This document shows, piece after piece, positions 3,163 through 56,555 of a stretch of DNA of 64,000 nucleotides. The notes under the pieces are model-generated. The model saw only the letters and a program-made list of their open reading frames with translations. It was not told the DNA's origin and did not search any database. The position numbers and the translations under genes were made by a program. This DNA comes from Octopus sinensis. Its lineage: Eukaryota. Location: positions 65,038,001-65,102,000 of the forward strand of contig NC_043005.1 of assembly GCF_006345805.1 (NCBI RefSeq), given 5' to 3'. Position 1 is the stretch's first letter; every line of letters starts with the position of its first letter.

Positions 3163-4875
3163 TACATCGATATAAAGGAAGACGATGTAATAAAGGCTAT
3201 AGATGAAATGAAAACAGACTCAGCTATTGGCCCCGATGGATTCCCGGCAATCCTCCTAAAAAAGTATGTAAGAGAGTCCTAGCAAGACCACTGCAGTTCC
3301 TCTTTCAGAGCTTCCTTGCAGCTGGCAAACTTCCAAGAAAACTGAAGGAAGGTAAAATATGCCCTATTCATAAAGGAGGTAGCAGAGCGGAGGCCAAGAA
3401 ATACAGACCTATCTCTCTCACCTCACACATCAGCAAGGTCGTGGAACGAATAGTCAGAAGGAAACTAATCACCTTCCTTGAAGAAAATGACTTGCTGCCT
3501 GATACCCAACATGGTTTCCGACCAGGAAGAAGCTGCTTAACTCAGCTCCTACAACACTATGACTGGGTGCTGAAACAACTGCTCAACCACTCAAATGTGG
3601 AAGTCATATATCTCGACTTTGCAAAGGCCTTTGATAAAGTCGATCATGGAATGATATGTCACAAACTGCGTGATCTTGGCATAGTTGGAAAATTGGGAGA
3701 ATGGCTTCATGACTTTCTGAAGAATAGAAGTCAGGTGGTAGCAGCCAATGGGGCCACTTCCATTAACACGCAAATAATGAGCGGTGTTCCGCAGGGCACT
3801 GTTTTGGGACCACTACTGTTCATAATGGCCCTCTCAGACATGCCCTCAGCCACGCAGAGAGCCACGATCACAAGTTATGCAGATGATACAAAATTTTCAC
3901 AGGCAATACAGAAACCTGAGGACACTAAGCACCTGCAATGTGAGCTGGACGAAATATACAAGTGGGCTGAAAAGAATAGCATGCAGTTCAATGCCGAAAA
4001 GTTTCAAGCTTTATACTATCAGCATGCAAGACTAAATGCAATACCCAATGAATACACTGGACCCGGAGGGATTGCAATCCCAGAGGCACAATCAGTGCGT
4101 GACCTGGGTATTCACATGAGTGATGACGCGACCTTTCATGTACATGTTGCTAAACTGGCAATGAAATGTAGACGGCTGGCTGGATGGATTCTTAGAACCT
4201 TTAGAACAAGAGAACAAGAAACCATGATGGTCCTCTGGAAGACACTTGTCCTAAGCCACTTTGACTATTGCTCTCAGCTATGGTCACCATCCAGTGTCAA
4301 GTTGATCACAGAACTTGAGGCGATCCAACGAAGCTACACGAAGAAGATAGCCTCTGTGCAGCATATGAGTTACTGGGAAAGACTCAAGAGATTAAAGCTC
4401 TATTCCCTGGAGCGTAGGCGAGAAAGATATGCCATAATATATATCTGGAAGATCCTGGAAGGACTTGTCCCAGACTTTGGCATCGAGAGTCACACAAATG
4501 CCAGAACCGGACGCCACTGCGTAGTACCAAGGATTCCAAATTTGCCATCAAGATGTAGGACAAGATATTGTGATAGCCTGGGCTTCAGAGGCCCACAGCT
4601 CTTCAATATCCTCCCGAAGAACCTGAGGGACCTGCATGGTGTGGATGCTGATTTATTTAAAGTAGGACTGGATCTCTTCCTGCCAGGTGTCCCGGATGAA
4701 CCAACTTCGCGGCAGGAGGTGCAGATGAGGGCAGCTGCATCGAACTCTCTCATGCATCAGATGGCGTTTGCTAAAAAGCATCCGTAAGGTAAAATCGTGT
4801 AGCAAACCAAATGGCGGTGCCCCAGCATGGCCACAGCTCATTAGCTGAAACTGGAAAAATCAAATTCAAAATCAA

Positions 4876-15039: not shown

Positions 15040-15790
15040 TGGCTAATCTTTTGCGATTAACTTTTGATAAAGGCGGACGTTTGATATTGCTACCCTCTTT
15101 TGAGTTTCTTTTCGTGATGTAGGTTCATGTGAGACCTCGGATATTAGGAGATCAAATTGTGTCTTGAAAGCATCTACCCAAATATATGTAGATCTCTGAC
15201 ATTTTTTGGGTAAGATATTAAATAGCTGTGGGCGTTTGAATCGTAAGCTATTGCGTGCCCGGTCCTCAAACAAGATGGGATACTTAGAGCCTTGGGAACA
15301 GTACAGTGACCACCAGTTCGGTGGCTGGTACCAACCCATCTAGGATCTTTCATATATATATATATATATATCACTGCATATCTCTCCCCTCATCGCTTCA
15401 GAGAGAAGAGTTGTAACTCTTTCAATCTCTCCTGGTTGCTCAACTGTCTTATTGATGCAATTTTCCTAGTGTAGCACCGCTGAACTGCCTCAAATTCCGC
15501 TATTAATTTGACACTGCCTACAGTTCAGAGCAGTAGTCCAGACAGTTGAGAGCCAATGTCCTCCATAAAACCAGCATAGTGTCCTGGTCTCTTGTTCTGA
15601 AATTTCTCAGAACCCATCAGGCCGTTCAACTGCACATTGCCACCATCTAGGGGATAAGTATATGAAACGAAGCGTCCTTGCTCATATAAATCCCCAGATC
15701 ACGCACTGTGTTTGACCCTGGGATTGCTACTCCTTTTCGGCCCAAATATTTTTGTTGCAGTACGTTAACTGGCTGCTAACATTAGTAAAG
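15040..15790 (-). mobile_element. Older degraded CR1-type LINE 3' fragment related to 3163-4878
   Basis: VRDLGIYMSKDASF, WVLRNFRTRDQDTMLVLWRTL, RPQLFNILPK and HEPTSR match the young copy. Many stops. Confidence 0.85.
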
Positions 15791-25145: not shown

Positions 25146-25344
25146 AGTTATCCCAGTTACCTGAGTTACCTTCTCCTAGAAGGATGCCCTAACAAAGGCT
25201 AGGAGTACTTCACTCCCAATGGTTTAACAGCGCGATCGGGTATTCAGTCCGATTATTTCTGTTCCCGCGCATGATACAGCCGTAAGCCTTAAGAATGAAA
25301 AAAACCCCACATTTATCGGATGGCCGTTGACTCTCAAGAGTCAT

Positions 25345-25378
<34 letters not shown>

Positions 25379-25391
25379 ATATATACACACA

Positions 25392-25424
<33 letters not shown>

Positions 25425-25426
<2 letters not shown>

Positions 25427-28400
25427 CATTATTGGTGAATTGAAGAAATGGAGCTGAACGCAGATTGAACAGAAATCGTTTTATTTCATTCTACACGTGT
25501 TTCGAAAGGCACAAATTACCAAAATCCGATTGAATAATGGGACCATATTGTGTCTTTCTCTTCAGGAAGAAAAAAGGAAATCCGTTGGAAAAACAAAAAC
25601 AGAACAGAGGCAGAGCAAAAAACAAATCGAACTGTGCTCCTAAGAGCCCATGGCGAAATGTTTATCAGTGTATGTTGAGAGAACCGGTGGCTGAAGAATT
25701 CAACAGGTCAGGCATCGGTCAAACATGTGGGTGAGGGTGTATAGATGTTCTTTGTGACCGAGAATAAAGTTCTGACTATTTAAATAATATTGGATGTTTT
25801 ATAAGGGGCGAGAAAAAAATCTACTTAGAGAGACGTGTGTGTGTATACTGTTCTATATATGTGTGTGTTGGCGAGGGGTAGAAAACATTTTTGTGTACGT
25901 GTGTGCGTTTGATCGTTCGGCTGTCAGTGGCTACTGCCGTGATAACCGTTGGGTGGCAGAAAGAAAAAAAATAAAGAAAAATTATATATATATATTTTAT
26001 GTTTTATGTGTGTGTGTGTGTGTTCATCTAAGCCTACCTTGACAAGGAAACCCCCCGCTGTGAAAAAACAAGCCCCGTTTGTCTTACAGGAGTAATTTCC
26101 CTTGCAGTGGTTAATTGTAGATATCTTAAAATCTATTTCAGAATTTGTTACCAAGGGCTATGGGTGCCGGTCTTATTTAAACGCTATTTAAAGGCCAGAT
26201 AAGTGTAACGCCGCCAATGGGGGCATCGAAAAGCCGACTGTAAAAGCCCGTTTAATCCGGCCTCTGGCAAACAAAATATGGAAGAGTTCGGAGACACAAA
26301 GGTTGCACTGTCTTCTGCCCCTATCAAATGGGAGGGCCACCGACAAAATTGACCATTCCAGCCTATAGCTTAAGTTCGCATCCCTCAGTCGCCATATTAG
26401 CTTACTGAGTCCCGTGGTCTGGCGCTTGTTCACGTCCCGAAAAGTTGCGTAATGGTTGGAGACACGCAAAGACAATCTTGAGGATGATGCCCCTATATAA
26501 GTGAAGGCATCTGAGTCCGTGTAAACCTTGCATTGGTAGACGGCGTTTTTGATCTTGGAGTTCGCCGACGTGAATCTTACTCTGCTAGGATTGGTTTCTG
26601 AAATTAGAACTGCGTTCCTGTCACTATATTCGTTCCGAGACCTGCAGCCGCTTACTACTCTATTTTCCACTACGTCACTATTAACTATAGGAATAACCCC
26701 TGATTCTCCACTATCTATCAGAGTGCTGTCATTGCTACTGCCCGTGGTACTGCTATTGCGGGAAATGATGCTGGGGATGCTAAGGGGCTCTCTACCCTAC
26801 TCCCATTGTTACCATCAACCACAACACCCCTATTTATAACTATACCCCTAGTGGGTACTCCCTGGCTGGAGCTGAGATTATGTCACTGTACTGGCTCTCA
26901 TATCATTATTACTACTATAATTATTCCTACTGAGCATTAAACCGGGAGCGGAAGAGGCTGTGCCTCCGGAAAAAGGTGATAGGGTCTTAGTAAGTAGCCT
27001 ATTATTATGGGAGGCGATTATCTGGGGCGAGGTTTTTAGTGTTGGAGAAAGCTATCCTAACTTTATGTGAGTTAACCGTGGAGTAATTTGGAATTTCTGG
27101 GGAAGTTATTGCGATGGCTTGTCTAAACATGAGGGGGAGGTTAGTTCTAATCTGCTTACCAAAGGGGATTACAAACCATATATGCTTATTCCTATCAGTG
27201 TGATGGGTCGGGCGCCAGCTCTCGCATTTGGGTGGGTGATTCTCGGATGAATAACGGGTCTTGGGTTAGTGTAAGACCTCCCGGACCGATAATTATCCTT
27301 GTTCGCTAAATTTAAAGCGGGAGCGACTACCCCGGTATCCGCCGCGCTCCCGTCCTTACTTAAAATGTTAATGTTATTATATACGGCCCTATCCTGATGA
27401 CCGAATGATGGCATCGGAAGGGCCGGATCATATAAATTACCTTCTGCCTATAACCGGCCTTGGATAGTGCGGCGTTATAAAAATCCGCTTTCTGCATAAA
27501 AATATCGGCACTGGCGGACAGGCCAGACAATCTTAGAGAGATGTTTTTAACCAAATTGTCTGTTACGGTTTTGGCATGATTTGAGAAGACACTGACATAC
27601 TTCAAATTAGTGGAAGGCTTATGGTAAGGGCAGTATGAGTCGCTATTAAGGTTAAGTGTAACGTCTAGGAAATTAGCCTTGGTGAGTTCGTTATCAAAAA
27701 CTATACTCATGCCCATTCTATTAAAAAACCTAGCTAACCTGCTCTTAGTTTTCTGCACTATTCTGTTCGTGGTGTTTTGCAGGTAAAACAGACAATCGTC
27801 ACGATACAGGCCGCCCGCGATTCCGGGAATTGATCGGACAATCGTAGAGAGAGAATATAATTCCGACCAAATCGGCTATCTGCGCACTATCCGAACTACC
27901 CATAGGCACATCAAATTCATTGGGAGTATCCTTACGGATCCACAGCTTATTATCAAACTTAATAAACGATTTCCTGGCAACTAAAATGATATCTATCTCT
28001 TCTCTGGTGAGGCCTGCCTTGTTGTGAGCATGCCAGAGGGCCTTATTTAGCACACTAGGTTAATCGAGGGGTAGAAGCTGGCGATATCAAACTGAATGAA
28101 CCTAGTACGGTTCTTATTGGGGATGGGAGAGAACCACTTCACTACCTGCGAGGAGTTGGCCCAGAGGCTGAGCTTCAGCTTGTTACTAAACTAGGGATAT
28201 ATTTATCTAAAATGTACTTACTGATTATCCCGATATCAGATCTAGCAGGGCATATGAGTCTTAGCGCTGGGTTGGTGTGGAAGTTAGGTTTATGGTCCTT
28301 CACTATAAATCTGGGTTGCTTGGGGCTAAGCGGCTGAGTTCTCATTTGAATTCGGTGTTTAAATATTATATCCTTAATTTCCAAGTTTACCTTCCTCAGG

Positions 28401-28819
28401 GTACTCCAATTGGTTTTCTATAATTTTTCTTGATCTCTTTACCGAGTAATCTAGGTACTGCTTAATGGGATCTTGTATGTGTTCCTGGTCTTGTCGGACT
28501 GGACCAGGACTCCGTCCGTTCTATTAATGTCCTTGGTAATTTTATCTAGGTATCTGAGGTGGGCATTTCTCCTGGGTGACTTCCTGAACTTAATCTTTCT
28601 AACTATGTCCCACAAGTCGTCCTCAAACTTCTTCAGTCTTGGGTTCGGTGGCGGCGTATCCAATGTTTTAAAAAGCCGGCCGTATTCGGACGATGCAGTT
28701 GTCGGTTCGATTTTAGATCTTCGTTCTCGTGGAAGAAAATGAGCCATCTTATCCGGTTTATGAATGCGTTGGTTTTACAAACCAACTCCTTAAGGAAGGC
28801 ATCCTTTGGTGGTATAGGA
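25425..28819 (-). mobile_element. Penelope-like element, left arm of palindrome (RT, C-terminal GIY-YIG, pseudo-LTR with HHR)
   Basis: PIPPKDAF..FINRIRW, LKKFEDDL, QSDKTRN, KDHKPNF..RLICPARSDIG, FIQFDIASFYPSI, FDVPMGSSDSAQIADLVG, GLYRDD, NFLDVTLNL, VYQC..YIG..R..NH, CNLCVSE. Single-base indels break the frame. Confidence 0.95.
25484..25572 (-). ncRNA. Type I hammerhead ribozyme, intact core (left arm, sense to the host GPCR)
   Basis: tttcttc-CUGAAGA-gaaagacac...gtgcctttc-GAAA-CACGUG-UA|gaatgaaa. Predicted GUA cleavage between 25492 and 25491. Confidence 0.8.
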
Positions 28820-30527
28820 CATAGTTAGAAAGATTAAGTTCAGGAAGTCACCAGGAGAAATGCCCACCTCAGATACCTAGATAAAATTACAAGGACATTA
28901 ATAGAACGGACGGAGTCCTGGTCCAGTCCGACAAGACCAGGAACACATACAAGATGCCCATTAAGCAGTACCTAGATTTACTCGGTAAAGAGATCAAGAA
29001 AAATTATAGAAAAACCAATTGGAGTACCCTGAGGAAGGTAAACTTGGAAATTAAGGATATATATTTAAACACCGAATTCAAATGAGAACTCAGCCGCTTA
29101 GCCCCAAGCAACCCAGATTTATAGTGAAGGAACCATAAACCTAACTTCCACACCAACCCAGCGCTAAGACTCATATGCCCTGCTAGATCTGATATCGGGA
29201 TAATCAGTAAGTACATTTTAGATAAATATATCCTAGTTTAGTAAACAAGCTGAAGCTCAGCCTCTGGCCAACTCCTCGCAGGTAGTGAAGTGGTTCTCTT
29301 CCATCCCCAATAAGAACCGTACTAGGTTCATTCAGTTTGATATCGCCAGCTTCTACCCCTCGATTAACCCTAGTGTGCTAAATAAGGCCCTCTGGCATGC
29401 TCACAACAAGGCAGGCCTCACCAGAGAAGAGATAGATATCATTTTAGTTGCCAGGAAATCGTTTATTAAGTTTGATAATAAGCTGTGGATCCGTAAGGAT
29501 ACTCCCAATGAATTTGATGTGCCTATGGTAGTTCGGATAGTGCGCAGATAGCCGATTTGGTCGGAATATATATCTCTACGAATTGTCCGATCAATTCCCG
29601 GAAATCGCGGGCGGCCTGTATCGTGACGATTGTCTGTTTTACCTGCAAAACACCACGAACAGAATAGTGCAGAAAACTAAGAGCAGGTTAGCTAGGTTTT
29701 TTAATAGAATGGGGGGCATGAGTATAGTTTTTGATAACGAACTCACCAAGGCTAATTTCCTAGACGTTACACTTAACCTTAATAGCGACTCATACTGCCC
29801 TTACCATAAGCCTCCACTAATTTGAAGTATGTCAGTGTCTTCTCAAATCATGCCAAAACCGTAACAGACAATTTGGTTAAAAACATCTCTCTAAGATTGT
29901 CTGGCCTGTCCGCCAGTGCCGATATTTTTATGCAGAAAGCGGATTTTTATAACGCCGCACTATCCAAGGCCGGTTATAGGCAGAAGGTAATTTATATTGA
30001 TCCGGCCCTTCCGATGCCATCATTCGGTCATCAGGATAGGGCCGTATATAATAACATTAACATTTTAAGTAAGGACGGGAGCGCGGCGGATACCGGGGTA
30101 GTCGCTCCCGCTTTTAATTTAGCGAACAAGGATAATTATCGGTCCGGGAGGTCTTACACTAACCCAAGACCCGTTATTCATCCGAGAATCACCCACCCAA
30201 ATGCGAGAGCTGGCGTCCCGACCCATCACACTGATAGGAATAAGCATATATGGTTTGTAATCCCCTTTGGTAAGCAGATTAGAACTAACCTCCCCCTCAT
30301 GTTTAGACAAGCCATCGCCAATAACTTCCCCAGAAATTCCAAATATTACTCCACGGTTAACTCACATAAAGTTAGGATAGCTTTCTCAACACTAAAAACC
30401 TCGCCCAGATAATCGCCTCCCATAATAATAGGCTACTTACTAAGACCCTATCACCTTTTTCCGGAGGCACAGCCTCTTCCGCTCCCGGTTTAATGCTCAG
30501 TAGGAATAATTTAGTAGTAATAATGAT

Positions 30528-31250
30528 ATGAGAGCCAGTACAGTGACACATAATCTCAGCTCCAGCCAGGGAGTACCCACTAGGGGTATAGTTATAAATA
30601 GGGGTGTTGTGGTTGATGGTAACAATGGGAGTAGGGTAGAGAGCCCCTTTAGCATCCCCAGCATCATTTCCCGCAATAGCAGTACCACGGGCAGTAGCAA
30701 TGACAGCACTCTGATAGATAGTGGAGAATCAGGGGTTATTCCTATAGTTAATAGTGACGTAGTGGAAAATAGAGTAGTAAGCGGCTGCAGGTCTCGGAAC
30801 GAATATAGTGACAGGAACGCAGTTCTAATTTCAGAAACCAATCCTAGCAGAGTAAGATTCACGTCGGCGAACTCCAAGATCAAAAACGCCGTCTACCAAT
30901 GCAAGGTCTACACGGACTCAGATGCCTTCACTTATATAGGGGCATCATCCTCAAGATTGTCTTTGCGTGTCTCCAACCATCACGCAACTTTTCGGGACGT
31001 GAACAAGCGCCAGACCACGGGACTCAGTAAGCTAATATGGCGACTGAGGGATGCGAACTTAAGCTATAGGCTGGAATGGTCAATTTTGTCGGTGGCCCTC
31101 CCATTTGATAGGGGCAGAAGACAGTGCAACCTTTGTGTCTCCGAACTCTTCCATATTTTGTTTGCCAGAGGCCGGATGGTAAACGGGCTTTTACAGTCGG
31201 CTTTTCGATGCCCCCATTGGCGGCGTTACACTTATCTGGCCTTTAAATAG
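30528..31250 (+). CDS. PLE linker plus GIY-YIG endonuclease (open 240-aa segment)
   Basis: AVYQCKV...YIGASS..LRVSNHHATF...LSKLIWRLR...LEWSIL...QCNLCVSE...CPH. Confidence 0.85.
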   Translation: MRASTVTHNLSSSQGVPTRGIVINRGVVVDGNNGSRVESPFSIPSIISRNSSTTGSSNDSTLIDSGESGVIPIVNSDVVENRVVSGCRSRNEYSDRNAVLISETNPSRVRFTSANSKIKNAVYQCKVYTDSDAFTYIGASSSRLSLRVSNHHATFRDVNKRQTTGLSKLIWRLRDANLSYRLEWSILSVALPFDRGRRQCNLCVSELFHILFARGRMVNGLLQSAFRCPHWRRYTYLAFK

Positions 31251-31856
31251 CGTTTATAAATAAGACCGGCACCCATAGCCCTTGGTAACAAATTCTGAAA
31301 TAGATTTAAGATATCTACAATTAACCACTGCAAGGGAAATTACTCCTGTAAGACAAACGGGGCTTGTTTTTTCACAGCGGGGGGTTTCTTGTCAAGGTAG
31401 GCTTGATGAACACACACACACACACATAAAACATAAAATATATATATATAATTTCTTTATTTTTTTCTTTCTGCCACCCAACGGTTATCACGGCAGTAGC
31501 CACTGACAGCCGAACGATCAAACGCACACACGTACACAAAAAATGTTTTCTACCCCTACGCCAACACACACATATATAGAACAGTATACACACACACACG
31601 TCTCTAAGTAGATTTTTCTCGCCCCTTATAAAACATCCAATATTATTTAAATAGTCAGAACTTTATTCTCGGTCACAAAGAACATCTATACACCCTCACC
31701 CACATGTTTGACCGATGCCTGACCTGTTGAATTCTTCAGCCACCGGTTCTCAACATACACTGATAAACAGTTTCGCCATGGGCTCTTAGGAGCACAGTTC
31801 GATTTGTTTTTTGCTCTGCCTCTGTTCTGTTTTTGTTTTTCCAACGGATTTCCTTT

Positions 31857-31944
31857 TTTCTTCCTGAAGAGAAGACACAATATGGTCCCATTATTCAATC
31901 GGATTTTGGTAATTTGTGCCTTTCGAAACACGTGTAGAATGAAA
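31857..31944 (+). ncRNA. Type I hammerhead ribozyme, intact core (right arm)
   Basis: CTGAAGA 31864-31870, GAAA 31925-31928, palindromic CACGTG, GTA cleavage after 31936, helix I tttcttc/gaatgaaa. Confidence 0.78.
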
Positions 31945-32390
31945 TAAAACGATTTCTGTTCAATCTGCGTTCAGCTCCATTTCTTCAATTCACCAATAAT
32001 GTTTTAATTTAAATTATCCGCACCAACGCACGGTTGCAACGCCAGATGGTTGTACCTCCAACCGTGCTGTTCACTGCTGTGATTTTTGCTACTAAGGTAT
32101 CGGTTTAACTTTTGATTAATCTAACAAGATTATTCATCTTTCTATTTCACATAAATTATATATATATATATATATATATAAATACATACCCATATATACA
32201 TACGTAAACATATACCCACATACATATGCATCCTTATACACATACATCAATACATATCCATACATAGATGCATGCATATACATATACATACACATACATA
32301 TGCACTAATACATATACATATATATATATATACATATATAGACACACACAGACACAAACACATATACATACATACATACATACATACATA

Positions 32391-32610
32391 CACGGTGGTG
32401 GTGACTGCTCCCTCGTTATCGAGTATGGCCATTGCACGAAGCTTAATCAGTGTTGTTATCGTGCAATTCCTGTGCAAGAAGATTTTTTTAAAGTGAGGAA
32501 AGGCTGTGAACTGAGTCAATCTCACTCACTAAGCAACAGCAGCCATAATCCGAAAAGAAGAACAAGTCAACATCATCGATAACCACTGAATCGTAGGTTT
32601 TATGTCATGC
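32391..32610. repeat. Unclassified dispersed repeat (copy 2)
   Basis: Direct-orientation homolog of 24836-25145, about 85 nt shorter, embedded in TACA repeats. Confidence 0.8.
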
Positions 32611-34716: not shown

Positions 34717-35392
34717 ATGTATAATATATATATATATATTATATATATATATATATAGATATATATATAGGAAACTACTTCGTTATCGAAACTCTCAGTT
34801 CGAGACCAAAGCAGTATACAAACAAAAAGATATTGCTTATGTGGTTGTTCTCTAAGAGACGACGATACTGCCGTTTAACCCTAGGAAGACATCTCCTTCA
34901 GCTGGTTTATTCAGTGCGCTCCTTGCATCTGTTGATCTCGAACAGAGATTTTTTTAACGGACTAGTTTCCTAGTTAGAAAATCAGTGATTGCATTACACT
35001 GTGTTTTCTATATATTGCAAGCGAGGTAAACTTCCGCCATTTCTGGCAATGAGAACCCACCAGCGAGGGGATCCACGTGGTTTGGTGGTCTTGAAGTCCG
35101 GGTGGCAGGAGTTATCTCCCGCTTGCAATAACGGGTGTGGGAAGCGCACTGAATAAACGGGCTGGAGAAAATGTCTTCTGACATGTTGTCTGTTAGAGGA
35201 CAGCCACATTAAACAATTCTATTTTGTAGTATATCCACCTTATAAGGGTATGCCTGTGTGTACATGAGTGCATTGATGTGTGCCTTGGTCAAACTCTTTT
35301 TGCCGGGCCCGAGGGGTATTGGTGGAAGATATTTGATGGAGGGATGAGGCAATAGACTTGCGGTTGCAATCATGGTGGGGGCGCGCAGTTAC

Positions 35393-35426: not shown

Positions 35427-37130
35427 GGCATTGGGTACCTTTTAAAATTGCTCTCTTCTCAGCCAGGCATAATATGCACTTCCTGCTGCTACTGAAGTAC
35501 GGTTTACATTTCGCTAGGATCTTCCGCTGTACTCCGTGGTGCTTTCTTTCAAAGCCCAGACGTTCTTGACTAGAGTTATAACGTTACGTCTCTCCGGGTC
35601 CTGAAGAGGCTGTCTATTGCCCACACATACTCACGCACGCTTGGTTGTCCATTGAGTCCTGTTGTTGTTACTTCCGCCTCGTAAACAACTGTCTTTGTAT
35701 TGCAGTGGCCGTTAAGTGGAGAAGTTGTGTTACTCCTGCATGAGCATCCTACCTCTTGCCTCGGGCGTGGGCCTAACTACTAAAATTTTTTTTTACACTA
35801 GATGCACAGCTAAAGGATAATCTCAAAGTATGTTTATTGAATATTTTGTTGAATTTATTGGTGCGGAAGAAGTGTCTACCAACTAAACTGAGGAAGATCT
35901 TACCTACTCTGGTCTTAATGTTTAAACAAAATAGCGGCATGGACCACAGTGGCGCTTTCTCTTGTGGGGGCGAGAGTTATGGTTTGGCATGTAAGTAATA
36001 TTATCCTTGAAGCCGCTGGCAGCCAGAGCCCGGTTATAGTACGTGGAGGCAGCATCAGAGATCTCTTTGCTTGAAGACAACCTGGCGTTTTCTCCTACTG
36101 ACGCCCTTAACCATATTCCTGAACACTGGATGGATGGCAGGGACCTGTGTTAACGTAAGACAACTTCTCGTTTGGTTTCCTAAAGGGCATATAGGCGCCA
36201 GATTCTAGGTCCAGGGTCACGCCAAGGAAATTTACTGTTTTCTGTTTGGGCTTTATAGTGACCTTTAGTCCGAGGGAGTTCATGGTACTTGTGAGGTCCA
36301 TTCTGAGCTAATGTGTGGCCGTTAGCGCCTCTTGGTATTGTCAGCGCATCGTTCCTGTGGAGATCAAAGCTAGCTGAAGGGAAATTCTCTTTTAGTGTAT
36401 CTCAGATGAAGAATCTGACTAGGTCACATACGTCTAGGAGCATCACATTAACAATACGTACCTTCCCCACATTAAGATATATTTCTTTACTGATCCACAA
36501 GGGGCTAAACATAGAGGGGGACAAATAAGGACAGACAAACGGATTAAGTCGAGTACATCGACCCAGTGCAAAACTGGTACTTTAATTATCGACCCCGAAA
36601 GGATGAAAGGCAAAGTCGACCTCGGCGGAATTTGAACTCAGAACGTAACGACAGACGAAATACCTATTTCTTTATTACCCACAAGGGGCTAAACACAGAG
36701 GGGACAAACAAGGACAGACATAGGTATTAAGTCGATTACATCGACCCAGTGCGTAACTGGTACTTAATTTATCGACCCCGAAAGGATGAAAGGCAAAGTC
36801 GACCTCGGCGGAATTTGAACTCACAACGTAATGCAGACGAAATACCGCTAAGCATTTCGCCCGGCGCGCTAACGTTTCCGCCAGCTCGCCGACCCAACCA
36901 AGGGACATAACTCCGAACCTAATCCTCTGGCCCGTTTTCGTTTCACCAGCTTCTTTTACACCAACCGCTGACCGGTTGTGTTAATCCACGTGCGACAATA
37001 GAGAACAGTCGCCATACACACTTCCGAGTGTAAAGTTAAAAATCCGATTGTTACCTAACACTCCATTGTATTCTTTGCGCGAAAGCGACTGGTAAGATCA
37101 GCTGTGATGGATATTTAATATATACATTTC
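35405..37130 (-). mobile_element. Old degraded PLE of the same broad type (RT, CxCR linker, GIY-YIG), split by a SINE dimer
   Basis: GSELCPLVG, VNFLGVTLDL..YMPFRKPN, CSCRSNTTSPLNGHC..VVYEAEV..EYV, VWALKE, RKCILCLAEKRAI. Confidence 0.85.
36476..36890 (-). mobile_element. Tandem dimer of SINE family C (Nin/Deu-domain-like)
   Basis: Head ggcgagctggc..gagttcaaattccgccg and central gaggtcgactttgcctttcatcctttcggggtcgat. The full copy is followed by a 5'-truncated copy. Confidence 0.88.
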
Positions 37131-47919: not shown

Positions 47920-49262
47920 TGTATATATATATGGAAAAAAGGTCAAGGTAGGAAATGCTAAAATAATTTTACAAAAAACATTTCAGCGCCGGTTTCAGTC
48001 ATTGAGACTTTTTCAACTGTAAGTATGGGAAACAATTAACTTTTGGAAAAATTGAAAGAAAAATCTTTTTAAAAGAATATTTTGCATAGTATTCAAATAC
48101 AAGGGACATTTTCCTTGATTCTGTCTGTCTCTGTCTCTCTTGTTTACTCTTTTGGGCTCGAAGTCGTTGTGAATTCTTGGTAGGGAAGAAGAAGAAGCAG
48201 AAGAAGAAGAAGAAGAAGAAGAAGAAGAAGAAGAAGAAGAAGAAGAAGAAGGAGGAGGAGGAAGAGGAGAAGAAGAAGAAGAAGAAGACGAAGAAGGAGA
48301 AGAAGAGAAGAAGAAGAAGAAGAAGAAGAAGAAGAAGAAGAGAAGAAGAAGAAGAAGAAGAAGAAGAGAAGAAGAAGAAGAAGAAGAAGAAGAAGAATGC
48401 GGTAGTGCCATGATAGTAGTAGGGTGTTAAAATGTCAAGTAACCTATAATTGACTCGTTATGGATAATAGCAGTGATTGGGAGTGTTTTGTTAATGAATT
48501 CTTGAGAATCTCTTGAGTGTATCATTTTAAATATTTGCGTGTGTTTGTGTTATTCTAAGGCCGTGGTGGATATGTTGTTTGTTGTAGACGCGTTCAGAAG
48601 GGATCTGTACTTCGTAATAAAGAGAGTCGCTTTACTAATTCGTTGGCTACAGGTTGTATCGTCCCTGAATTCCTAGAGGAGAAAATTCTGAAGCTTGGAT
48701 TTTTTTATTGCCGCAAATGTCGATGTGTTGGCTGAATGTTATTTTCTGTTTTGGGGAATTTTGATCTGGGATCTGTACAGAGCCATTCTTTTACGTAGAC
48801 TGTTTTTGTTTGGCCTATGTATTGCTCTTGACTCCCAGAGCATGTTAGTGCGTATATCAGCTTCTCCGAAGCACATATGAAGTTGCTTTTCACTGTGAAA
48901 TGTTGTCCCTGTTTGAAGGAGAATTCTGATCCCTCAATTAAATTGACGCATATCCCACAGTTATTTCTTCCGCATTTTTTACTGACGGATTCTATGTTGT
49001 TGCTGAGCGTATTCGGGCTTGTGTTAGGAGACTTTTCATAGATTTGGGTTGTCTCTTGCTTTTTATGATGGTGTGTGTTTGGAGGATTAAGTTCATTCTG
49101 TGGTCGTTTTTTAGCAGGGAAATGTTTTGAAGGATGGTGTCGAAGGCTTCATTGTTAAGAGGGTTGTGTGTGGAGATGTATGGTAGGGCACGTTGAAAGC
49201 ATATGTCAATAGTGAAGGTGACCTTTTTTCCATATATATCAACTCGTGTGTCCCTATTCAAA
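47920..49262 (-). mobile_element. Canonical (Penelope/Neptune-type) PLE 3' fragment: thumb, Zn linker, GIY-YIG; (CTT)n 48184-48397; HHR remnant 48019-47984
   Basis: LPYISTHNP..KSKRQPKSMKSLLTQAR, KKCGRNNCGIC, FICASEKLIYALTCSG..QYIGQT. Remnant cag-ttgaaaa-agtc.gact-GAAAC-CG-GCG-ctg. Confidence 0.85.
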
Positions 49263-49885: not shown

Positions 49886-50825
49886 CAGGGGTTGGGCAAA
49901 ATAATGGAAACACCTTAAAATTTCAAACAAATTTATTTTAATATGGGGTAGGACCGCCTTTGGCAGTAATTACAGCTTGAATTCTACGAGGTATGGACTC
50001 GTACAAAGTTTCAATTGTTTCCAAAGGGATTTTTGTCCATTCTTCAGCTAAAACAGTCTCCTGTTCTTGTAGTGATGATGGTGGAGGATGTCGACTCCTT
50101 ACTTGTTTTTCTAAAATGCACCATAAATGTTTAATAATATTGAGATCTGGGGACTGTGGTGGCCAGAAAAATGTTCAACTTCACTAGAATGTTCCTTGTG
50201 CCATTCAGTAACAACTTTAGCTGTGTGAATTGGTACATTATCATCCTGACAGACTGCTTTTCCCTCCGGAAACAGTTCCGCAACCATAGGATGAATTTGA
50301 TGAGATAAAATAGTCTTGAATATAATTCTGCCATAAAGAGAAACCACTGGGCTGGGGAATTGACAAGATATAGCCCAGCCCCGATCATCACAAATCCTCC
50401 TCCATGTTTAACAGTTGGAAGAAGTTGCAGTCTGGGTCAGATGCTTCTTTTGGCTGTCTCCACACACATACTCGGCCGGTGGTCGGAAATAAGGTAAAGA
50501 ATGACTCGTCCGAGAAAACAACATTGTTCCACTGCTGTAGGGACCGGTGCTATCGCTTTTTACTGCACTCTAAATGCTTTGCAACGTTTGTTTTTGAAAG
50601 TAGTGGTTTTCTGATTGCAGCCTTCCGTGAAATCTGGCTTTGTGCGGCTCCTGCCGAACAGTTTTTGTGGAAATTGCAGTAATTTTGGGAGCTGTACTTT
50701 TTAACAATTCACGTAAGAGTCCGACGGTCCCTATCTGAAAGCTTTGGTTTTCTTCCGGAGTTTTGTTTCGACGAAGAGGTTTTTCCATCTTTCTCAAAGG
50801 CTGTCGTTACTTTCGAGACAGTACT
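49886..50825 (-). mobile_element. Tc1-like transposon, 5'-truncated pseudogene with one TIR
   Basis: TA|caggggttgggcaaaataatggaaacacc TIR. TVSKV..NSGRKPK, WNNVVFSDES, AVCQDDNVPIHTAKVVTEW, PQSPDLNII. Confidence 0.9.
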
Positions 50826-54448: not shown

Positions 54449-56555
54449 GGTTGTAAAGATCAACTACTCATCAATAAGATGATCTTAGAAGATTGTCACA
54501 AACGACACTAAAACTTATTAATAGCCTGGATAGACTATAAAAAGGCTTTTGATAGCCTACCACATAGCTGGATTAAGAAATGCCTAGAAATGTATAAGAT
54601 AGCACCTACTCTGCGAAACTTTTTGTCTGTAAGTATGAGATCATGGAGAACCACACTAACTTTGAACAGTGACAATGAATCTCTAAATGCGGGTGATGTA
54701 AAAATTTCTTGTGGCATTTTCCAGGGTGACTCACTATCACAACTCCTCTTCTGTTTAGCCTTAATACCTATCTCAAAACTGCTCAATGACGCGCAGTACG
54801 GATATAAAATGTTTGATAAAAATATAAATCATCTCATTTACATGGATGATTTAAAGCTCTTTGCAAAAAATGACCAACAACTCAAGAGCTTACTAGCGAT
54901 TGTCAAACAATTCAGTGATGACATCAGAATGCAATTTGGCCTCGATAAATGTGCAAAGGAAAAATGACAGAAACACCTAACGTTAACCTTGACTAGCAGA
55001 ATGTCATAAAAGAATTAGACCCAGCGGAGAACTACAAGTATCTAGGGGTAATTAAAGGAGACGGAATAAGGCATTCAGAGATGAAGTAAAAGATCAGGAG
55101 AGAATGTTATCGCAGAGTAAGAGCACCACTCAAGACAGAGCTGAATGCGAGAAACAGGATCGAAGCGATCAATGCATTAGCCATACCAGTCGTGACTTAC
55201 AGTTTCAATATCGTTAACTGGTCAATTACTGAAATATGTAATCTTGACAGAAAAATACGAAAACTGTTGACAATGCATACAATGCACCACCCTAAGGCAG
55301 ATACAGAACGACTTTATCTGCAAAGAAAAGTGGGAGGCCGTGGACTTTTACAACTGGCAATAACAATGAAGATTGCTACAATTGGCCGAGACACCTACCT
55401 GAAAAACTCTGAGGACTGGATGTTAAAACTTGTCTCAAAACATGAAAACAAGAAAGCATCATACTCAGTAACAAAACAGGCAAAGGAATATCTAAGTGAA
55501 TTCCGAATACAACCAATTTCGGAATTAGAGATAGACATACAAGAAACAAGCACAGAAAAAGCTAAGCGCATGAAAACCCGTGCTAAATCTTCGGCCTTAG
55601 ATATTCTGAATGATAAATGGCAAGAAAAACCTCTCTATGGCAAATACCCAAAGAGAGCGAATAATGCAGATGTTGACAAAGCCCTGACCCATCAATGGCT
55701 AATGGCCTCTGGCTTAAAATCTGAAACAGAGGGGTTTATCATAGCAGCTCAAGATCAATGCCTACCAACAAGAAACTACCAGGCCAACATATTAAAGATC
55801 GGCAGTAGCCCAACATGTCGTGTATGTCAGCAACAAAATGAAACCATTGATCATGTGGTCTCCAAGTGCAGTCTTCTAGCGCCTACAGAGTATCTCAACA
55901 GGCATGATAGAGCTGCACAATATATTCACTGGGTAATCTGCAAAAACCTGGATTTGCCCCATGAGCAAAACTGGTGGGAACACAAACCACCTCCAGTGCT
56001 TGAAAATGACCACATCTCACTCCTCTGGAACTTCACCATTCAAACTGACAGAAAGATAGATGCAAATAGGCCAAACATCATATTGAAAAACTTCAAACAA
56101 AGAACATGCCTCCTCATTGATATGACTGTCTCAATCGATATAAACGTATCTGCCAAGACCTACCAAAAATTGAGCAAATATAAAGATCTTGAAATAGAAA
56201 TCAGCAAAATGTGGAAGCTGAAGACTAAAACAATACCTGTTGTCGTAGGTACCCTGGGAATGATAGCAAAAGGGGCTGATTGCTACCTAACTCAGATACC
56301 AGGAACCTCAAAATGGCAGAAATTCAAAAGATAGTGCTCATGGGAACTGCTCATATCCTACGCAAAATACTTTCTATGTAATCTCGAGGTTTAAAACAAA
56401 CATTTGTTTTAGACATCCACTAATACAACACAAAAAACAACCAAATATATGGCACACTAGGCATAACAACAACGTGAACTTCAAACCTCTTGTCTCTTGA
56501 GGTCTCTGGGTGAGACTTGGAGCCAACTTGTACAAATATAAGGCAAAAGTCAAAC

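What the first reader, a model, noticed from the sequence alone, without database searches (positions are those of the whole stretch)
25425..32155. 6.6-kb head-to-head palindrome of a young Penelope-like element inside a GPCR intron
Arms 25425-28610 and 28817-32003 (~3.19 kb each) are near-identical reverse complements around a 206-bp spacer. The spacer is extra 5' ORF of the left copy (PIPPKDAF...FEDDLW), and the two differently 5'-truncated copies join through ~3 nt of microhomology. The whole unit sits in (TA)n. Inverted insertions are known for PLEs, but here both arms span RT to pseudo-LTR. The host pre-mRNA would fold into a >3-kb dsRNA, a strong substrate for ADAR (very active in coleoids) and for siRNA/piRNA production, and a replication-fragile site.
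Basis: partly seen in the sequence, partly recalled or inferred. Interest (0 to 1): 0.88.

Follow-up and report, generated by a model that had tools for sequence, protein, structure and literature searches.

The report
Head-to-head Penelope-like retrotransposon double insertion
This is a real 6.7-kb inverted pair of copies of a recently inserted Penelope-like retrotransposon (Hydra clade) sitting in a TA microsatellite of a probable octopod genome; the layout is already a textbook hallmark of these elements, so it is an unusually large but ordinary example.

Summary
Arms 25422-28610 and 28817-32006 are reverse complements around a 206-bp spacer. The spacer continues the left copy's ORF towards its N-terminus.

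The element is a Penelope-like element (PLE) of the Hydra clade. It has the RWK and DKT motifs, a C-terminal GIY-YIG nuclease without CCHH, a (TA)n target, and TERT as its best structural match.

The arms differ by 8 substitutions and 40 short slippage-type indels. Frame-breaking variants split evenly between arms, and a 2.4-kb ORF can be threaded from variants of either arm. I therefore read the indels as unpolished long-read noise on two essentially identical, intact copies.

Three of six relatives' loci from other assemblies show the same head-to-head topology, with arms of 193-1,115 nt. In each, a one-sided 'tail' sits on the shorter copy. The window's extra 149 nt (32007-32155) behaves the same way and probably holds the element's 5'UTR and first codons.

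The best explanation is one integration event with reverse transcription primed on both strands of the cut (TA)n target. Snap-back self-priming and a fold-back assembly artefact fit poorly.

No GPCR exon was found in the window. The dsRNA/ADAR consequences are untested.

This is a new member of a known kind, and interest is modest.

The parts
25343..25421 (.). Left target flank: (TA)n microsatellite, about 41 units, abutting the 3' end of the long copy.
   Evidence: TRF; sequence.
25422..28816 (-). Long copy of the Hydra-clade PLE (3,395 nt). It runs from about codon 12 of the ORF to the element's 3' end and has no tail.
   Evidence: Alignment; frame map; family alignment.
26184..28815 (-). 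ORF of the long copy (RT plus GIY-YIG EN), broken in the assembly by slippage-type indels. Motifs: RW 28744-28761, DKT 28481-28498, RT-A FDIASFYPSI 28062-28091, RT-C YRDD 27786-27806, GIY 26524-26544, YIG 26485-26502, CxxC-E 26287-26307, CxH 26214-26228.
25422..26183 (-). 3' non-coding region of the long copy (about 760 nt). No hammerhead ribozyme was detected.
28611..28816 (-). 206-bp 'spacer': the extra 5' part of the long copy's ORF (IPPKDAF...FEDDLW), absent from the short copy. It contains one frameshift in an A-run.
28816..28817 (.). Head-to-head junction of the two 5'-truncated copies. No complementarity for snap-back priming and no palindrome.
28817..32006 (+). Short copy (3,190 nt), 5'-truncated 206 nt further in than the long copy. 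ORF 28817-31250, 3' region 31251-32006. Motifs: DKT 28927-28944, RT-A 29336-29365, RT-C 29619-29639, degenerate linker 30780-30809, GIY 30888-30908, YIG 30930-30947, CxxC-E 31125-31145, CxH 31206-31220.
32007..32155 (+). 149-nt one-sided extension of the short copy. This is the probable PLE 'tail' or pLTR end, holding the element's own 5'UTR plus about the first 11 codons (...LSISHK), which end where the long copy's ORF begins (IPP...).
   Evidence: Analogy with the tails in L005 and L002. PSSM rank P = 1.2e-3. [quoted passage not shown] The assignment is inferred, not proven.
32157..32392 (.). Right target flank: (TA)16 followed by a degenerate ATAC/TATACA microsatellite.
   Evidence: TRF; sequence.

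Best explanation
This is a single, recent integration of a Hydra-clade Penelope-like retrotransposon into a (TA)n microsatellite. It produced two converging copies.

Proposed mechanism:
1. The element's GIY-YIG endonuclease cut both strands of the AT-rich target.
2. Each exposed 3'-OH primed reverse transcription of a separate element RNA (target-primed reverse transcription from both sides).
3. One cDNA started at the canonical 3' end and ran almost to the 5' end of the ORF. This is the left, long copy.
4. The other cDNA started about 150 nt further downstream on a longer (tandem or pLTR-containing) transcript, which left a one-sided 'tail'. It stopped 206 nt earlier. This is the right, short copy.
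5. The two 5'-truncated ends were joined by host end-joining without detectable homology.

The result is a 6.7-kb head-to-head unit. Its arms were identical at birth and probably still are. The 40 indels between them are unpolished long-read consensus errors.

Shown here: the anatomy, the family assignment, the recurrence of the topology in relatives, and the noise signature.

Inferred: two-sided priming, the identity of the tail, and end-joining.
For: Anatomy:
- Arm, spacer and flank coordinates.

Family assignment:
- 356 homologues of about 700 aa.
- The alignment shows the RWK, DKT, CxCX5C, GIY..YIG without CC, CxxC-E and CxH motifs, exactly as published for the Hydra clade (PMC8557442).
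- GIY-YIG is the Pfam family most often matched by members.
- The model of an intact relative has pLDDT 91, and its best structural match is TERT.

Noise rather than divergence:
- 31 of 40 indels are slips of an adjacent identical unit.
- Each arm alone stays open for at most 141 nt, while a path mixing variants from both arms stays open for 2,416 nt. The antisense control gives 531 nt.
- Frame-keeping variants split 9 left-only, 9 right-only and 10 either.
- Intact 1.1-1.3-kb LINE ORFs elsewhere in the window would have P of about 2e-4 at that indel rate.

Recurrence in relatives:
- L002, L003 and L005 have inverted 3' fragments of 1,115, 193 and 364 nt (at least 99.5% identical) abutting the 5' end of a full copy.
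- L001, L004 and L006 have direct pLTR or tandem structures.

One-sided tail:
- In all three inverted relatives the long copy ends directly in (TA)n and the short copy carries an extra stretch.
- In L005 that stretch is 72 nt of the element's own 5' start.
- The window shows the same asymmetry, and the tail end scores P = 1.2e-3 against the family's N-terminal profile.

Mechanism:
- A purified PLE protein cleaves and extends both target strands in vitro, prefers AT-rich sites and starts reverse transcription at two internal sites whose interval equals the 'tail' (PMC11167929).
Against: - No reads are available, so the assembly cannot be verified directly.
- The elevated indel noise shows this region was poorly polished, which is also where mis-assemblies occur.
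- No second copy of this family was available to define the true element ends.
- The tail assignment rests on analogy and a short peptide match, and the tail shows no in-frame ATG.
- Two-sided priming has been shown in vitro only for a Penelope/Poseidon-clade element, not for the Hydra clade.
- Canonical hammerhead ribozymes, reported as readily detected in the Hydra clade, were not found. They were also not found by Rfam in three relatives' loci, so the test may simply lack sensitivity.
Confidence: 0.72

Rival explanations
1. Self-priming (snap-back). A single cDNA folded back on itself at its 3' end and copied itself, giving the second arm. Self-priming was proposed for head-to-head PLE structures in Adineta vaga.
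For: PMC3846280 infers self-priming from palindromes found at inverted PLE junctions. The topology here (arms plus a loop-like spacer contiguous with one arm) is what a hairpin with a 206-nt loop would give.
Against: No bases are complementary between the long cDNA's 3' end (...GGTATA) and the site where self-copying would have to begin. No palindrome longer than 2 nt lies at the junction. A self-copy must reproduce its template's outer end and then run into the target flank. Instead, the short copy carries a 149-nt extension that the long copy lacks. In L005 and L002 the equivalent extension is element 5' sequence, not flank.
Confidence: 0.08
2. Assembly artefact. A fold-back (missed-adapter or template-complement) chimeric long read, or a mis-join of two different genomic copies, created a palindrome that does not exist in the genome.
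For: The arms carry a noisy, unpolished consensus (40 slippage indels). Published work notes that PLE tandem and inverted structures often cause assembly problems (PMC8557442).
Against: A fold-back read gives a palindrome that is symmetric about the molecule's end and whose symmetry continues into the flank. Here the centre is asymmetric: a 206-nt unique stretch continues one arm's ORF. The outer ends are asymmetric too (a 149-nt tail on one side only), and the flanks are unrelated. The homology stops at the same element position in both arms, next to TA repeats. The same topology occurs in 3 of 6 relatives' loci from independent assemblies at 35-165x coverage.
Confidence: 0.1
3. Two separate events. 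Either a second copy of the same family later inserted in the opposite orientation exactly at the 5' end of the first, or a post-insertion inverted duplication arose by replication template switching.
For: PLEs nest into each other (PMC3846280). A second, older Hydra-type fragment lies only 3.4 kb away at about 35.44-36.43 kb, so the region has been hit more than once.
Against: No TA target or target duplication lies between the copies. The arms show at most 0.25% substitution difference. Identical-arm head-to-head pairs in relatives point to one concerted event. A replication-based inverted duplication would not give one arm an element-derived tail.
Confidence: 0.05
4. The arms are genuinely diverged, dead copies. 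The 40 indels are real mutations, or errors made by the reverse transcriptase.
For: Each arm as assembled is riddled with frameshifts.
Against: The indel-to-substitution ratio of 5:1 is the reverse of normal mutation. 31 of 40 indels are slips of an adjacent identical unit. The frame-breaking changes split 9:9 between arms and cancel to give one 2.4-kb ORF. Relatives' arms differ by substitutions only. An RT error rate of about 0.6% per nt would be incompatible with a replicating element.
Confidence: 0.04

Closest known systems
Hydra clade of Penelope-like elements (Craig et al. 2021, PMC8557442)
   Same: It has a single ORF with an N-terminal RW(K) motif, DKT instead of DKG, and an RT followed by a C-terminal GIY-YIG EN with no two cysteines between GIY and YIG. 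CxxC and CxH motifs flank the conserved E and N. It inserts into (TA)n, is frequently 5'-truncated, forms direct or inverted terminal repeats, and carries a one-sided tail.
   Different: The window copy's CxCX5C linker is degenerate: one Cys is left, and both arms agree on this. The protein carries about 150 aa of S/N-rich low-complexity inserts. The unit is about 3.55 kb rather than under 3 kb. No canonical hammerhead was detected. The host is a cephalopod; the clade was described mainly from cnidarians, with a few molluscs.
Canonical Penelope 'inverted pLTR' insertions (D. virilis Penelope; A. vaga Pen2a, PMC3846280)
   Same: An inverted 5'-truncated copy abuts the 5' end. An optional tail sits at one inverted end. 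The pLTR reaches into the first ~12 codons of the ORF. The target is AT-rich.
   Different: In those elements the inverted part is usually a ~200-bp pLTR. Here the inverted copy is 3.19 kb, about 94% of the longer copy, so the locus is a near-complete palindrome. The tail is 149 nt rather than 30-40 nt.
L1 twin priming (inversion/truncation of LINE-1 insertions; named from my own knowledge of the literature)
   Same: Both target strands prime reverse transcription, and the two cDNAs are joined in the middle. This gives a 5' segment inverted relative to the 3' segment.
   Different: Twin priming copies one RNA, so the two segments are essentially non-overlapping. Here the arms overlap over 3.19 kb, so two template molecules (or two passes) are required. 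There is also no poly(A).
PAc Penelope-like element, in vitro system (PMC11167929)
   Same: The protein cleaves and extends both top and bottom strands and prefers AT-rich cleavage sites. It uses two internal RT start sites whose interval equals the 'tail'.
   Different: PAc belongs to a different clade (Penelope/Poseidon, from a lizard) and has a hammerhead ribozyme. The complete inverted product has not been reconstituted in vitro.

Membership tests
Penelope-like elements (PLE) | Single ORF encoding a reverse transcriptase fused to a GIY-YIG endonuclease | tested here: met
   [quoted passage not shown] A PDB profile search hits an RT palm. Pfam GIY-YIG matches 4 of 25 family members and a neighbouring fragment in L004.
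Penelope-like elements (PLE) | RT lineage sister to telomerase RT | tested here: inconclusive
   The best Foldseek match for the intact relative's model (pLDDT 91) is Tribolium TERT, E = 4.9e-9, and many TERTs rank among the top hits ahead of R2 and L1. Bacterial DRT9 RTs score almost as well, and I made no phylogeny.
Penelope-like elements (PLE) | Complex insertion architecture: 5' truncation, pseudo-LTRs direct or inverted, and an optional tail at one end | tested here: met
   In the window: head-to-head copies and a one-sided 149-nt extension. In relatives: 3 of 6 loci inverted, 3 of 6 direct, with tails on the short copy.
Penelope-like elements (PLE) | Hammerhead ribozyme motif in the pLTR (canonical EN+ clades, including Hydra) | tested here: inconclusive
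   No Rfam hammerhead hit at E<=1 over 8.5 kb or at E<=10 over 241 nt. The one CUGANGA..GAAA candidate folds no better than shuffles. Rfam also found none in three relatives' loci, so the test's sensitivity for this clade is unproven.
Hydra clade of PLEs | RWK motif present; DKG changed to DKT | tested here: met
   The family consensus reads RMRWKA and ADKTxN. The window reads INRIRW (28744-28761) and SDKTRN.
Hydra clade of PLEs | Linker Zn-knuckle in the form CxCX5C | tested here: not met
   The motif is present in homologues (CNCRxxxxCPL). In the window copy it is degenerate (SGCRSRNEYS, one Cys), and both arms agree within a gap-free 533-nt block. The family has the feature; this copy has lost it.
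Hydra clade of PLEs | No CCHH cysteines between GIY and YIG; CxxC and CxH around the conserved E and N | tested here: met
   The window reads AVYQCKVYTDSDAFTYIG (no CC pair), QCNLCVSE and RCPHW.
Hydra clade of PLEs | Insertion into (TA)n | tested here: met
   (TA)41 lies on the left and (TA)16 on the right of the unit 25422-32155. Relatives L001, L002, L003 and L005 also abut TA repeats.
L1-type twin priming product | The two inverted segments derive from one RNA and therefore do not overlap substantially | tested here: not met
   The arms overlap over 3,190 nt.
Fold-back (missed-adapter) assembly artefact | A palindrome symmetric about its centre, with symmetry continuing into the flank | tested here: not met
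   The centre has a 206-nt unique stretch, only one side has the 149-nt extension, and the flanks are unrelated. Read-level support is not testable with these tools.

The most novel reading that the evidence does not exclude
The locus may be a natural snapshot of concerted two-strand target-primed reverse transcription by a PLE. Both cDNAs are near full-length, and they record two distinct initiation sites 149 nt apart. The element would be a currently active octopod Hydra-clade PLE that has lost its linker Zn-knuckle yet still targets (TA)n. That would uncouple the knuckle from microsatellite targeting. If the locus is transcribed, the resulting 3.2-kb perfect hairpin would be a strong endogenous source of siRNA/piRNA or ADAR-edited dsRNA in a coleoid.
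Probability: 0.15. Interest if true: 0.5.

Novelty: new member of a known kind. Interest (0 to 1): 0.27.

Why it matters
The finding has practical and modest scientific value.

- It shows how to tell a genuine TE-made palindrome from a fold-back artefact. The markers are an asymmetric centre, a one-sided tail, element-defined ends and recurrence in relatives.
- It shows that indel-rich 'divergence' between identical repeats can be a polishing artefact.
- It adds an apparently intact, recently inserted Hydra-clade PLE in a cephalopod.
- It provides an extreme example (94% overlap) of the head-to-head structures that any model of PLE integration must explain. In 4 of 4 loci examined, the shorter copy carries the tail and the longer copy ends directly in (TA)n. 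This is a small regularity that an in vitro system could test.
- A 3.2-kb perfect inverted repeat is also a potential hairpin-RNA source and a site of instability, but nothing in the sequence shows that this happens.

Tried and rejected
- Pfam on individual ORF fragments and on the stitched 839-aa protein found nothing. Pfam on four intact homologues also found nothing at E<=0.01.
- An exact-protein look-up of two window ORFs in public assemblies found no record, so the source assembly and independent assemblies of the locus could not be reached.
- A sequence profile against the PDB gave only a weak retron RT hit.
- Hammerhead ribozyme: Rfam scans were negative. A CUGAAGA-N54-GAAA-C(ACGU)G candidate at 31864-31935 was rejected, because it folds no better than shuffles and has no Rfam support.
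- GPCR host gene: a six-frame ORF screen, TM-segment ranking and class-A motif search found only TE remnants and microsatellite translations. I did not run Pfam on all six-frame ORFs.
- Junction microhomology cannot be assessed without an independent full-length copy.
- I considered a possible 32-nt mini-intron in the tail that would link an upstream ATG in frame. I dropped it as too short and too speculative.
- I considered an inverted target duplication in L003. It is better explained by a pre-existing palindromic (TA)n site.
Full report
**1. The observation**

An inverted repeat is present at the stated place. A gapped local alignment of the left side against the reverse complement of the right side gives arms at 25422-28610 and 28817-32006 with a 206-bp spacer (28611-28816). 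The arms share 3,155 matches, 8 mismatches and 40 gaps (ungapped blocks). No further copy of the element lies in the 64-kb window.

(TA)41 at 25343-25425 abuts the left arm. On the right, 149 nt of complex sequence (32007-32155) separate the arm from (TA)16 and a degenerate ATAC microsatellite.

**2. The differences between the arms are assembly noise**

- The indel-to-substitution ratio is 5:1, and 31 of the 40 indels add or remove a copy of the adjacent base or unit.
- Both arms carry pieces of one long ORF, broken at different places.
- Each arm alone stays open for at most 141 nt. A path that may choose, at each discrepancy, the variant of either arm stays open for 2,416 nt, up to the family-conserved C-terminus. 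The same procedure on the antisense strand reaches only 531 nt.
- At 9 indel sites only the left variant keeps the frame, at 9 only the right variant, and at 10 either will do.
- This even split on top of one intact ORF is what independent consensus errors produce. It is not what mutation produces.
- The noise is local. The window holds uninterrupted LINE ORFs of 1.1-1.3 kb, which at the arms' indel rate (0.63% per nt per arm) would survive with P of about 2e-4.
- The likely cause is failed polishing of a duplicated or multi-copy sequence. That cause is an inference.
- True substitution divergence between the arms is at most 0.25%.

**3. What the element is**

A conceptual 839-aa protein stitched from overlapping frame pieces of both arms has no Pfam hit. 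It does have 356 homologues, typically about 700 aa on contigs of about 2.5 kb. The closest named one is from the octopod Argonauta hians.

The alignment shows the following features:
- an N-terminal RMRWKA motif (window: INRIRW, in the spacer);
- ADKTxN (window: SDKTRN);
- RT motifs FDIxxFYPSI, YRDDGL and FLDV;
- a CxCX5C knuckle;
- GIY..YIG with no cysteine pair between them;
- CxxC before the catalytic E, and CxH near the C-terminus.

This is, item by item, the published diagnosis of the Hydra clade of Penelope-like elements, which also inserts into (TA)n (PMC8557442).

Further support:
- GIY-YIG is the Pfam family most often matched by members.
- A profile search of the PDB hits an RT palm.
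- An AlphaFold model of an intact relative (pLDDT 91) has Tribolium TERT as its best structural match, with many TERTs ahead of R2 and L1. This fits the PLE-telomerase kinship, although bacterial DRT9 RTs score similarly and I built no tree.

Departures from the published clade description:
- The window copy's knuckle is degenerate (one Cys, both arms agree).
- The protein carries S/N-rich inserts.
- No hammerhead ribozyme was found. Rfam also found none in three relatives' loci, so that negative result is weak.

**4. Anatomy of the pair**

The left copy lies on the minus strand and the right copy on the plus strand, so their 5' ends meet at 28816|28817 and their 3' ends face outwards.

The spacer is the extra 5' ORF of the left copy. 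Its peptide IPPKDAFLKEL...INRIRW aligns with residues ~13-40 of the family. The left copy therefore lacks only about the first 12 codons and the 5'UTR. The right copy is truncated 206 nt further in.

**5. The same topology recurs in relatives**

I fetched six genomic loci that encode intact relatives and compared each with itself.

| Locus | Structure next to the full copy | Length | Identity |
|---|---|---|---|
| L002 | inverted 3' fragment abutting the 5' end | 1,115 nt | 99.6% |
| L003 | inverted 3' fragment abutting the 5' end | 193 nt | 99.5% |
| L005 | inverted 3' fragment abutting the 5' end | 364 nt | 100% |
| L001 (Argonauta) | direct pseudo-LTR | 516 nt | 100% |
| L006 | direct pseudo-LTR | 694 nt | 99.9% |
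| L004 | direct tandem at the 3' end | 202 nt | 98% |

The few differences between the relatives' arms are substitutions, unlike in the window.

The literature states the same. [quoted passage not shown] See also PMC3846280.

The window is therefore the long-armed extreme of a known architecture, not a new one.

**6. The 149 nt at 32007-32155**

In L002, L003 and L005 the longer copy ends directly in (TA)n, while the shorter, inverted copy carries extra sequence beyond its 3' end. In L005 this is 72 nt identical to the first 73 nt of the long copy's own 5' end. In L002 it includes a 34-nt match to the 5' region. So the copy runs 3' end then 5' start, as on a tandem template.

The window shows the same asymmetry: the long copy runs straight into (TA)n, and the short copy has 149 extra nt before (TA)n.

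The last codons of this stretch (...LSISHK) score in the top 0.12% of all window 10-mers against the family's profile for the residues just before the conserved 'IP' (P = 1.2e-3, roughly 0.007 after allowing for frames and offsets). The long copy's ORF begins with IPP.

I conclude, with moderate confidence, that 32007-32155 is the element's own 5'UTR plus about 11 codons. No in-frame ATG is visible in the tail. That is not informative, given the error rate.

**7. Mechanism**

Both outer ends are element 3' ends joined to an AT-rich target, which is the signature of target-primed reverse transcription on both sides of the break. A purified PLE protein cleaves and extends both target strands in vitro, prefers AT-rich sites, and initiates at two internal sites whose interval corresponds to the tail (PMC11167929).

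The arms overlap by 3.19 kb, so a single pass along one RNA (as in L1 twin priming) cannot explain them. Two templates are needed.

The rival model, self-priming (PMC3846280), fits poorly for three reasons:
- No bases are complementary between the long cDNA's 3' end and the site where self-copying would have to start.
- There is no palindrome at the junction.
- A self-copy could not acquire an element-derived tail that its template lacks.

A fold-back read artefact would be symmetric at the centre and into the flanks. Here both the centre and the ends are asymmetric and the flanks are unrelated. Without reads I keep it at about 10%.

**8. Context claims**

I found no GPCR-like exon or motif in any frame. 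The window consists of LINE and Tc1/mariner remnants, other PLE fragments and microsatellites.

The host is probably an octopod or other coleoid. Both the PLE and an intact LINE ORF have their closest named relatives in Argonauta hians, with the LINE hit at 63-65% identity. Recently active PLE families are already catalogued in Octopus vulgaris (PMC13282606).

Whether the locus is transcribed, edited, processed into small RNAs or fragile cannot be told from the sequence. Small RNAs that switch polarity across inverted PLE halves were reported in A. vaga (PMC3846280), so the idea is reasonable but untested here.

**9. Verdict**

It is a new member (family and locus) of a known kind with a known architecture. 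Its only unusual aspects are the length of the inverted overlap, the long tail and the degenerate Zn-knuckle. Interest is modest.

Noticed in passing
window 35440-36430 (- strand): A second, older, 5'-truncated Hydra-clade PLE fragment lies here, from a different family. It has an intact-looking CxCX5C (CSCRSNTTSPLNGHC), VVYEAEV and KCILCLAEK. Its 3' end runs into a TA repeat near 35390. It matches P0040 residues 358-677 in several frames.
   Followed up: partly
window 48708-49148 (- strand): An ORF with a GIY-YIG-like motif that carries a cysteine between GIY and YIG (KLIYALTCSGSQEQYIGQTK). It may be a remnant of a canonical (non-Hydra) PLE clade.
   Followed up: no
window 3207-4784 (+), 54512-56331 (+), 49941-50436 (-): An intact 526-aa stop-to-stop non-LTR RT ORF, 63-65% identical to Argonauta hians proteins. 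A second LINE RT remnant and a Tc1/mariner transposase remnant are also present. No host exon was recognised anywhere in the window.
   Followed up: partly
window 30780-30809 (+) and 26623-26652 (-): The Zn-knuckle (CxCX5C) that the literature tentatively links to (TA)n targeting is degenerate in this element: one Cys remains, and both arms agree. The insertion is still in (TA)n.
   Followed up: partly
L001 13701-17266 (Argonauta hians contig BAAFZT010000038.1): A 356-bp satellite array switches orientation near 15732, giving 1.5-kb perfectly complementary inverted arrays.
   Followed up: no
L003 7720-7777 and 10378-10440: The PLE target looks like a pre-existing palindromic site. 'acctgacatatatgac' and its reverse complement flank the (TA)n on the two sides of the insertion.
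   Followed up: partly
L002 7897-7930: A 12-nt string, AGTTCTTGGTTA, occurs on both sides of the head-to-head junction. The 5'UTR start of the long copy is therefore complementary to the truncation point of the short copy. This may be a clue to where the second cDNA stops.
   Followed up: no
window 32056-32155 (+): Within the putative tail, an ATG-initiated 20-codon ORF ends at a GT...AG-bounded 32-nt stretch containing CTAAC. Removing that stretch would join the ORF in frame to ...IIHLSISHK. It is too short for a normal intron and may be coincidence.
   Followed up: no
L002, L003, L005 and window: In all four head-to-head loci the shorter copy carries the tail, and the longer copy ends directly in (TA)n.
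   Followed up: partly
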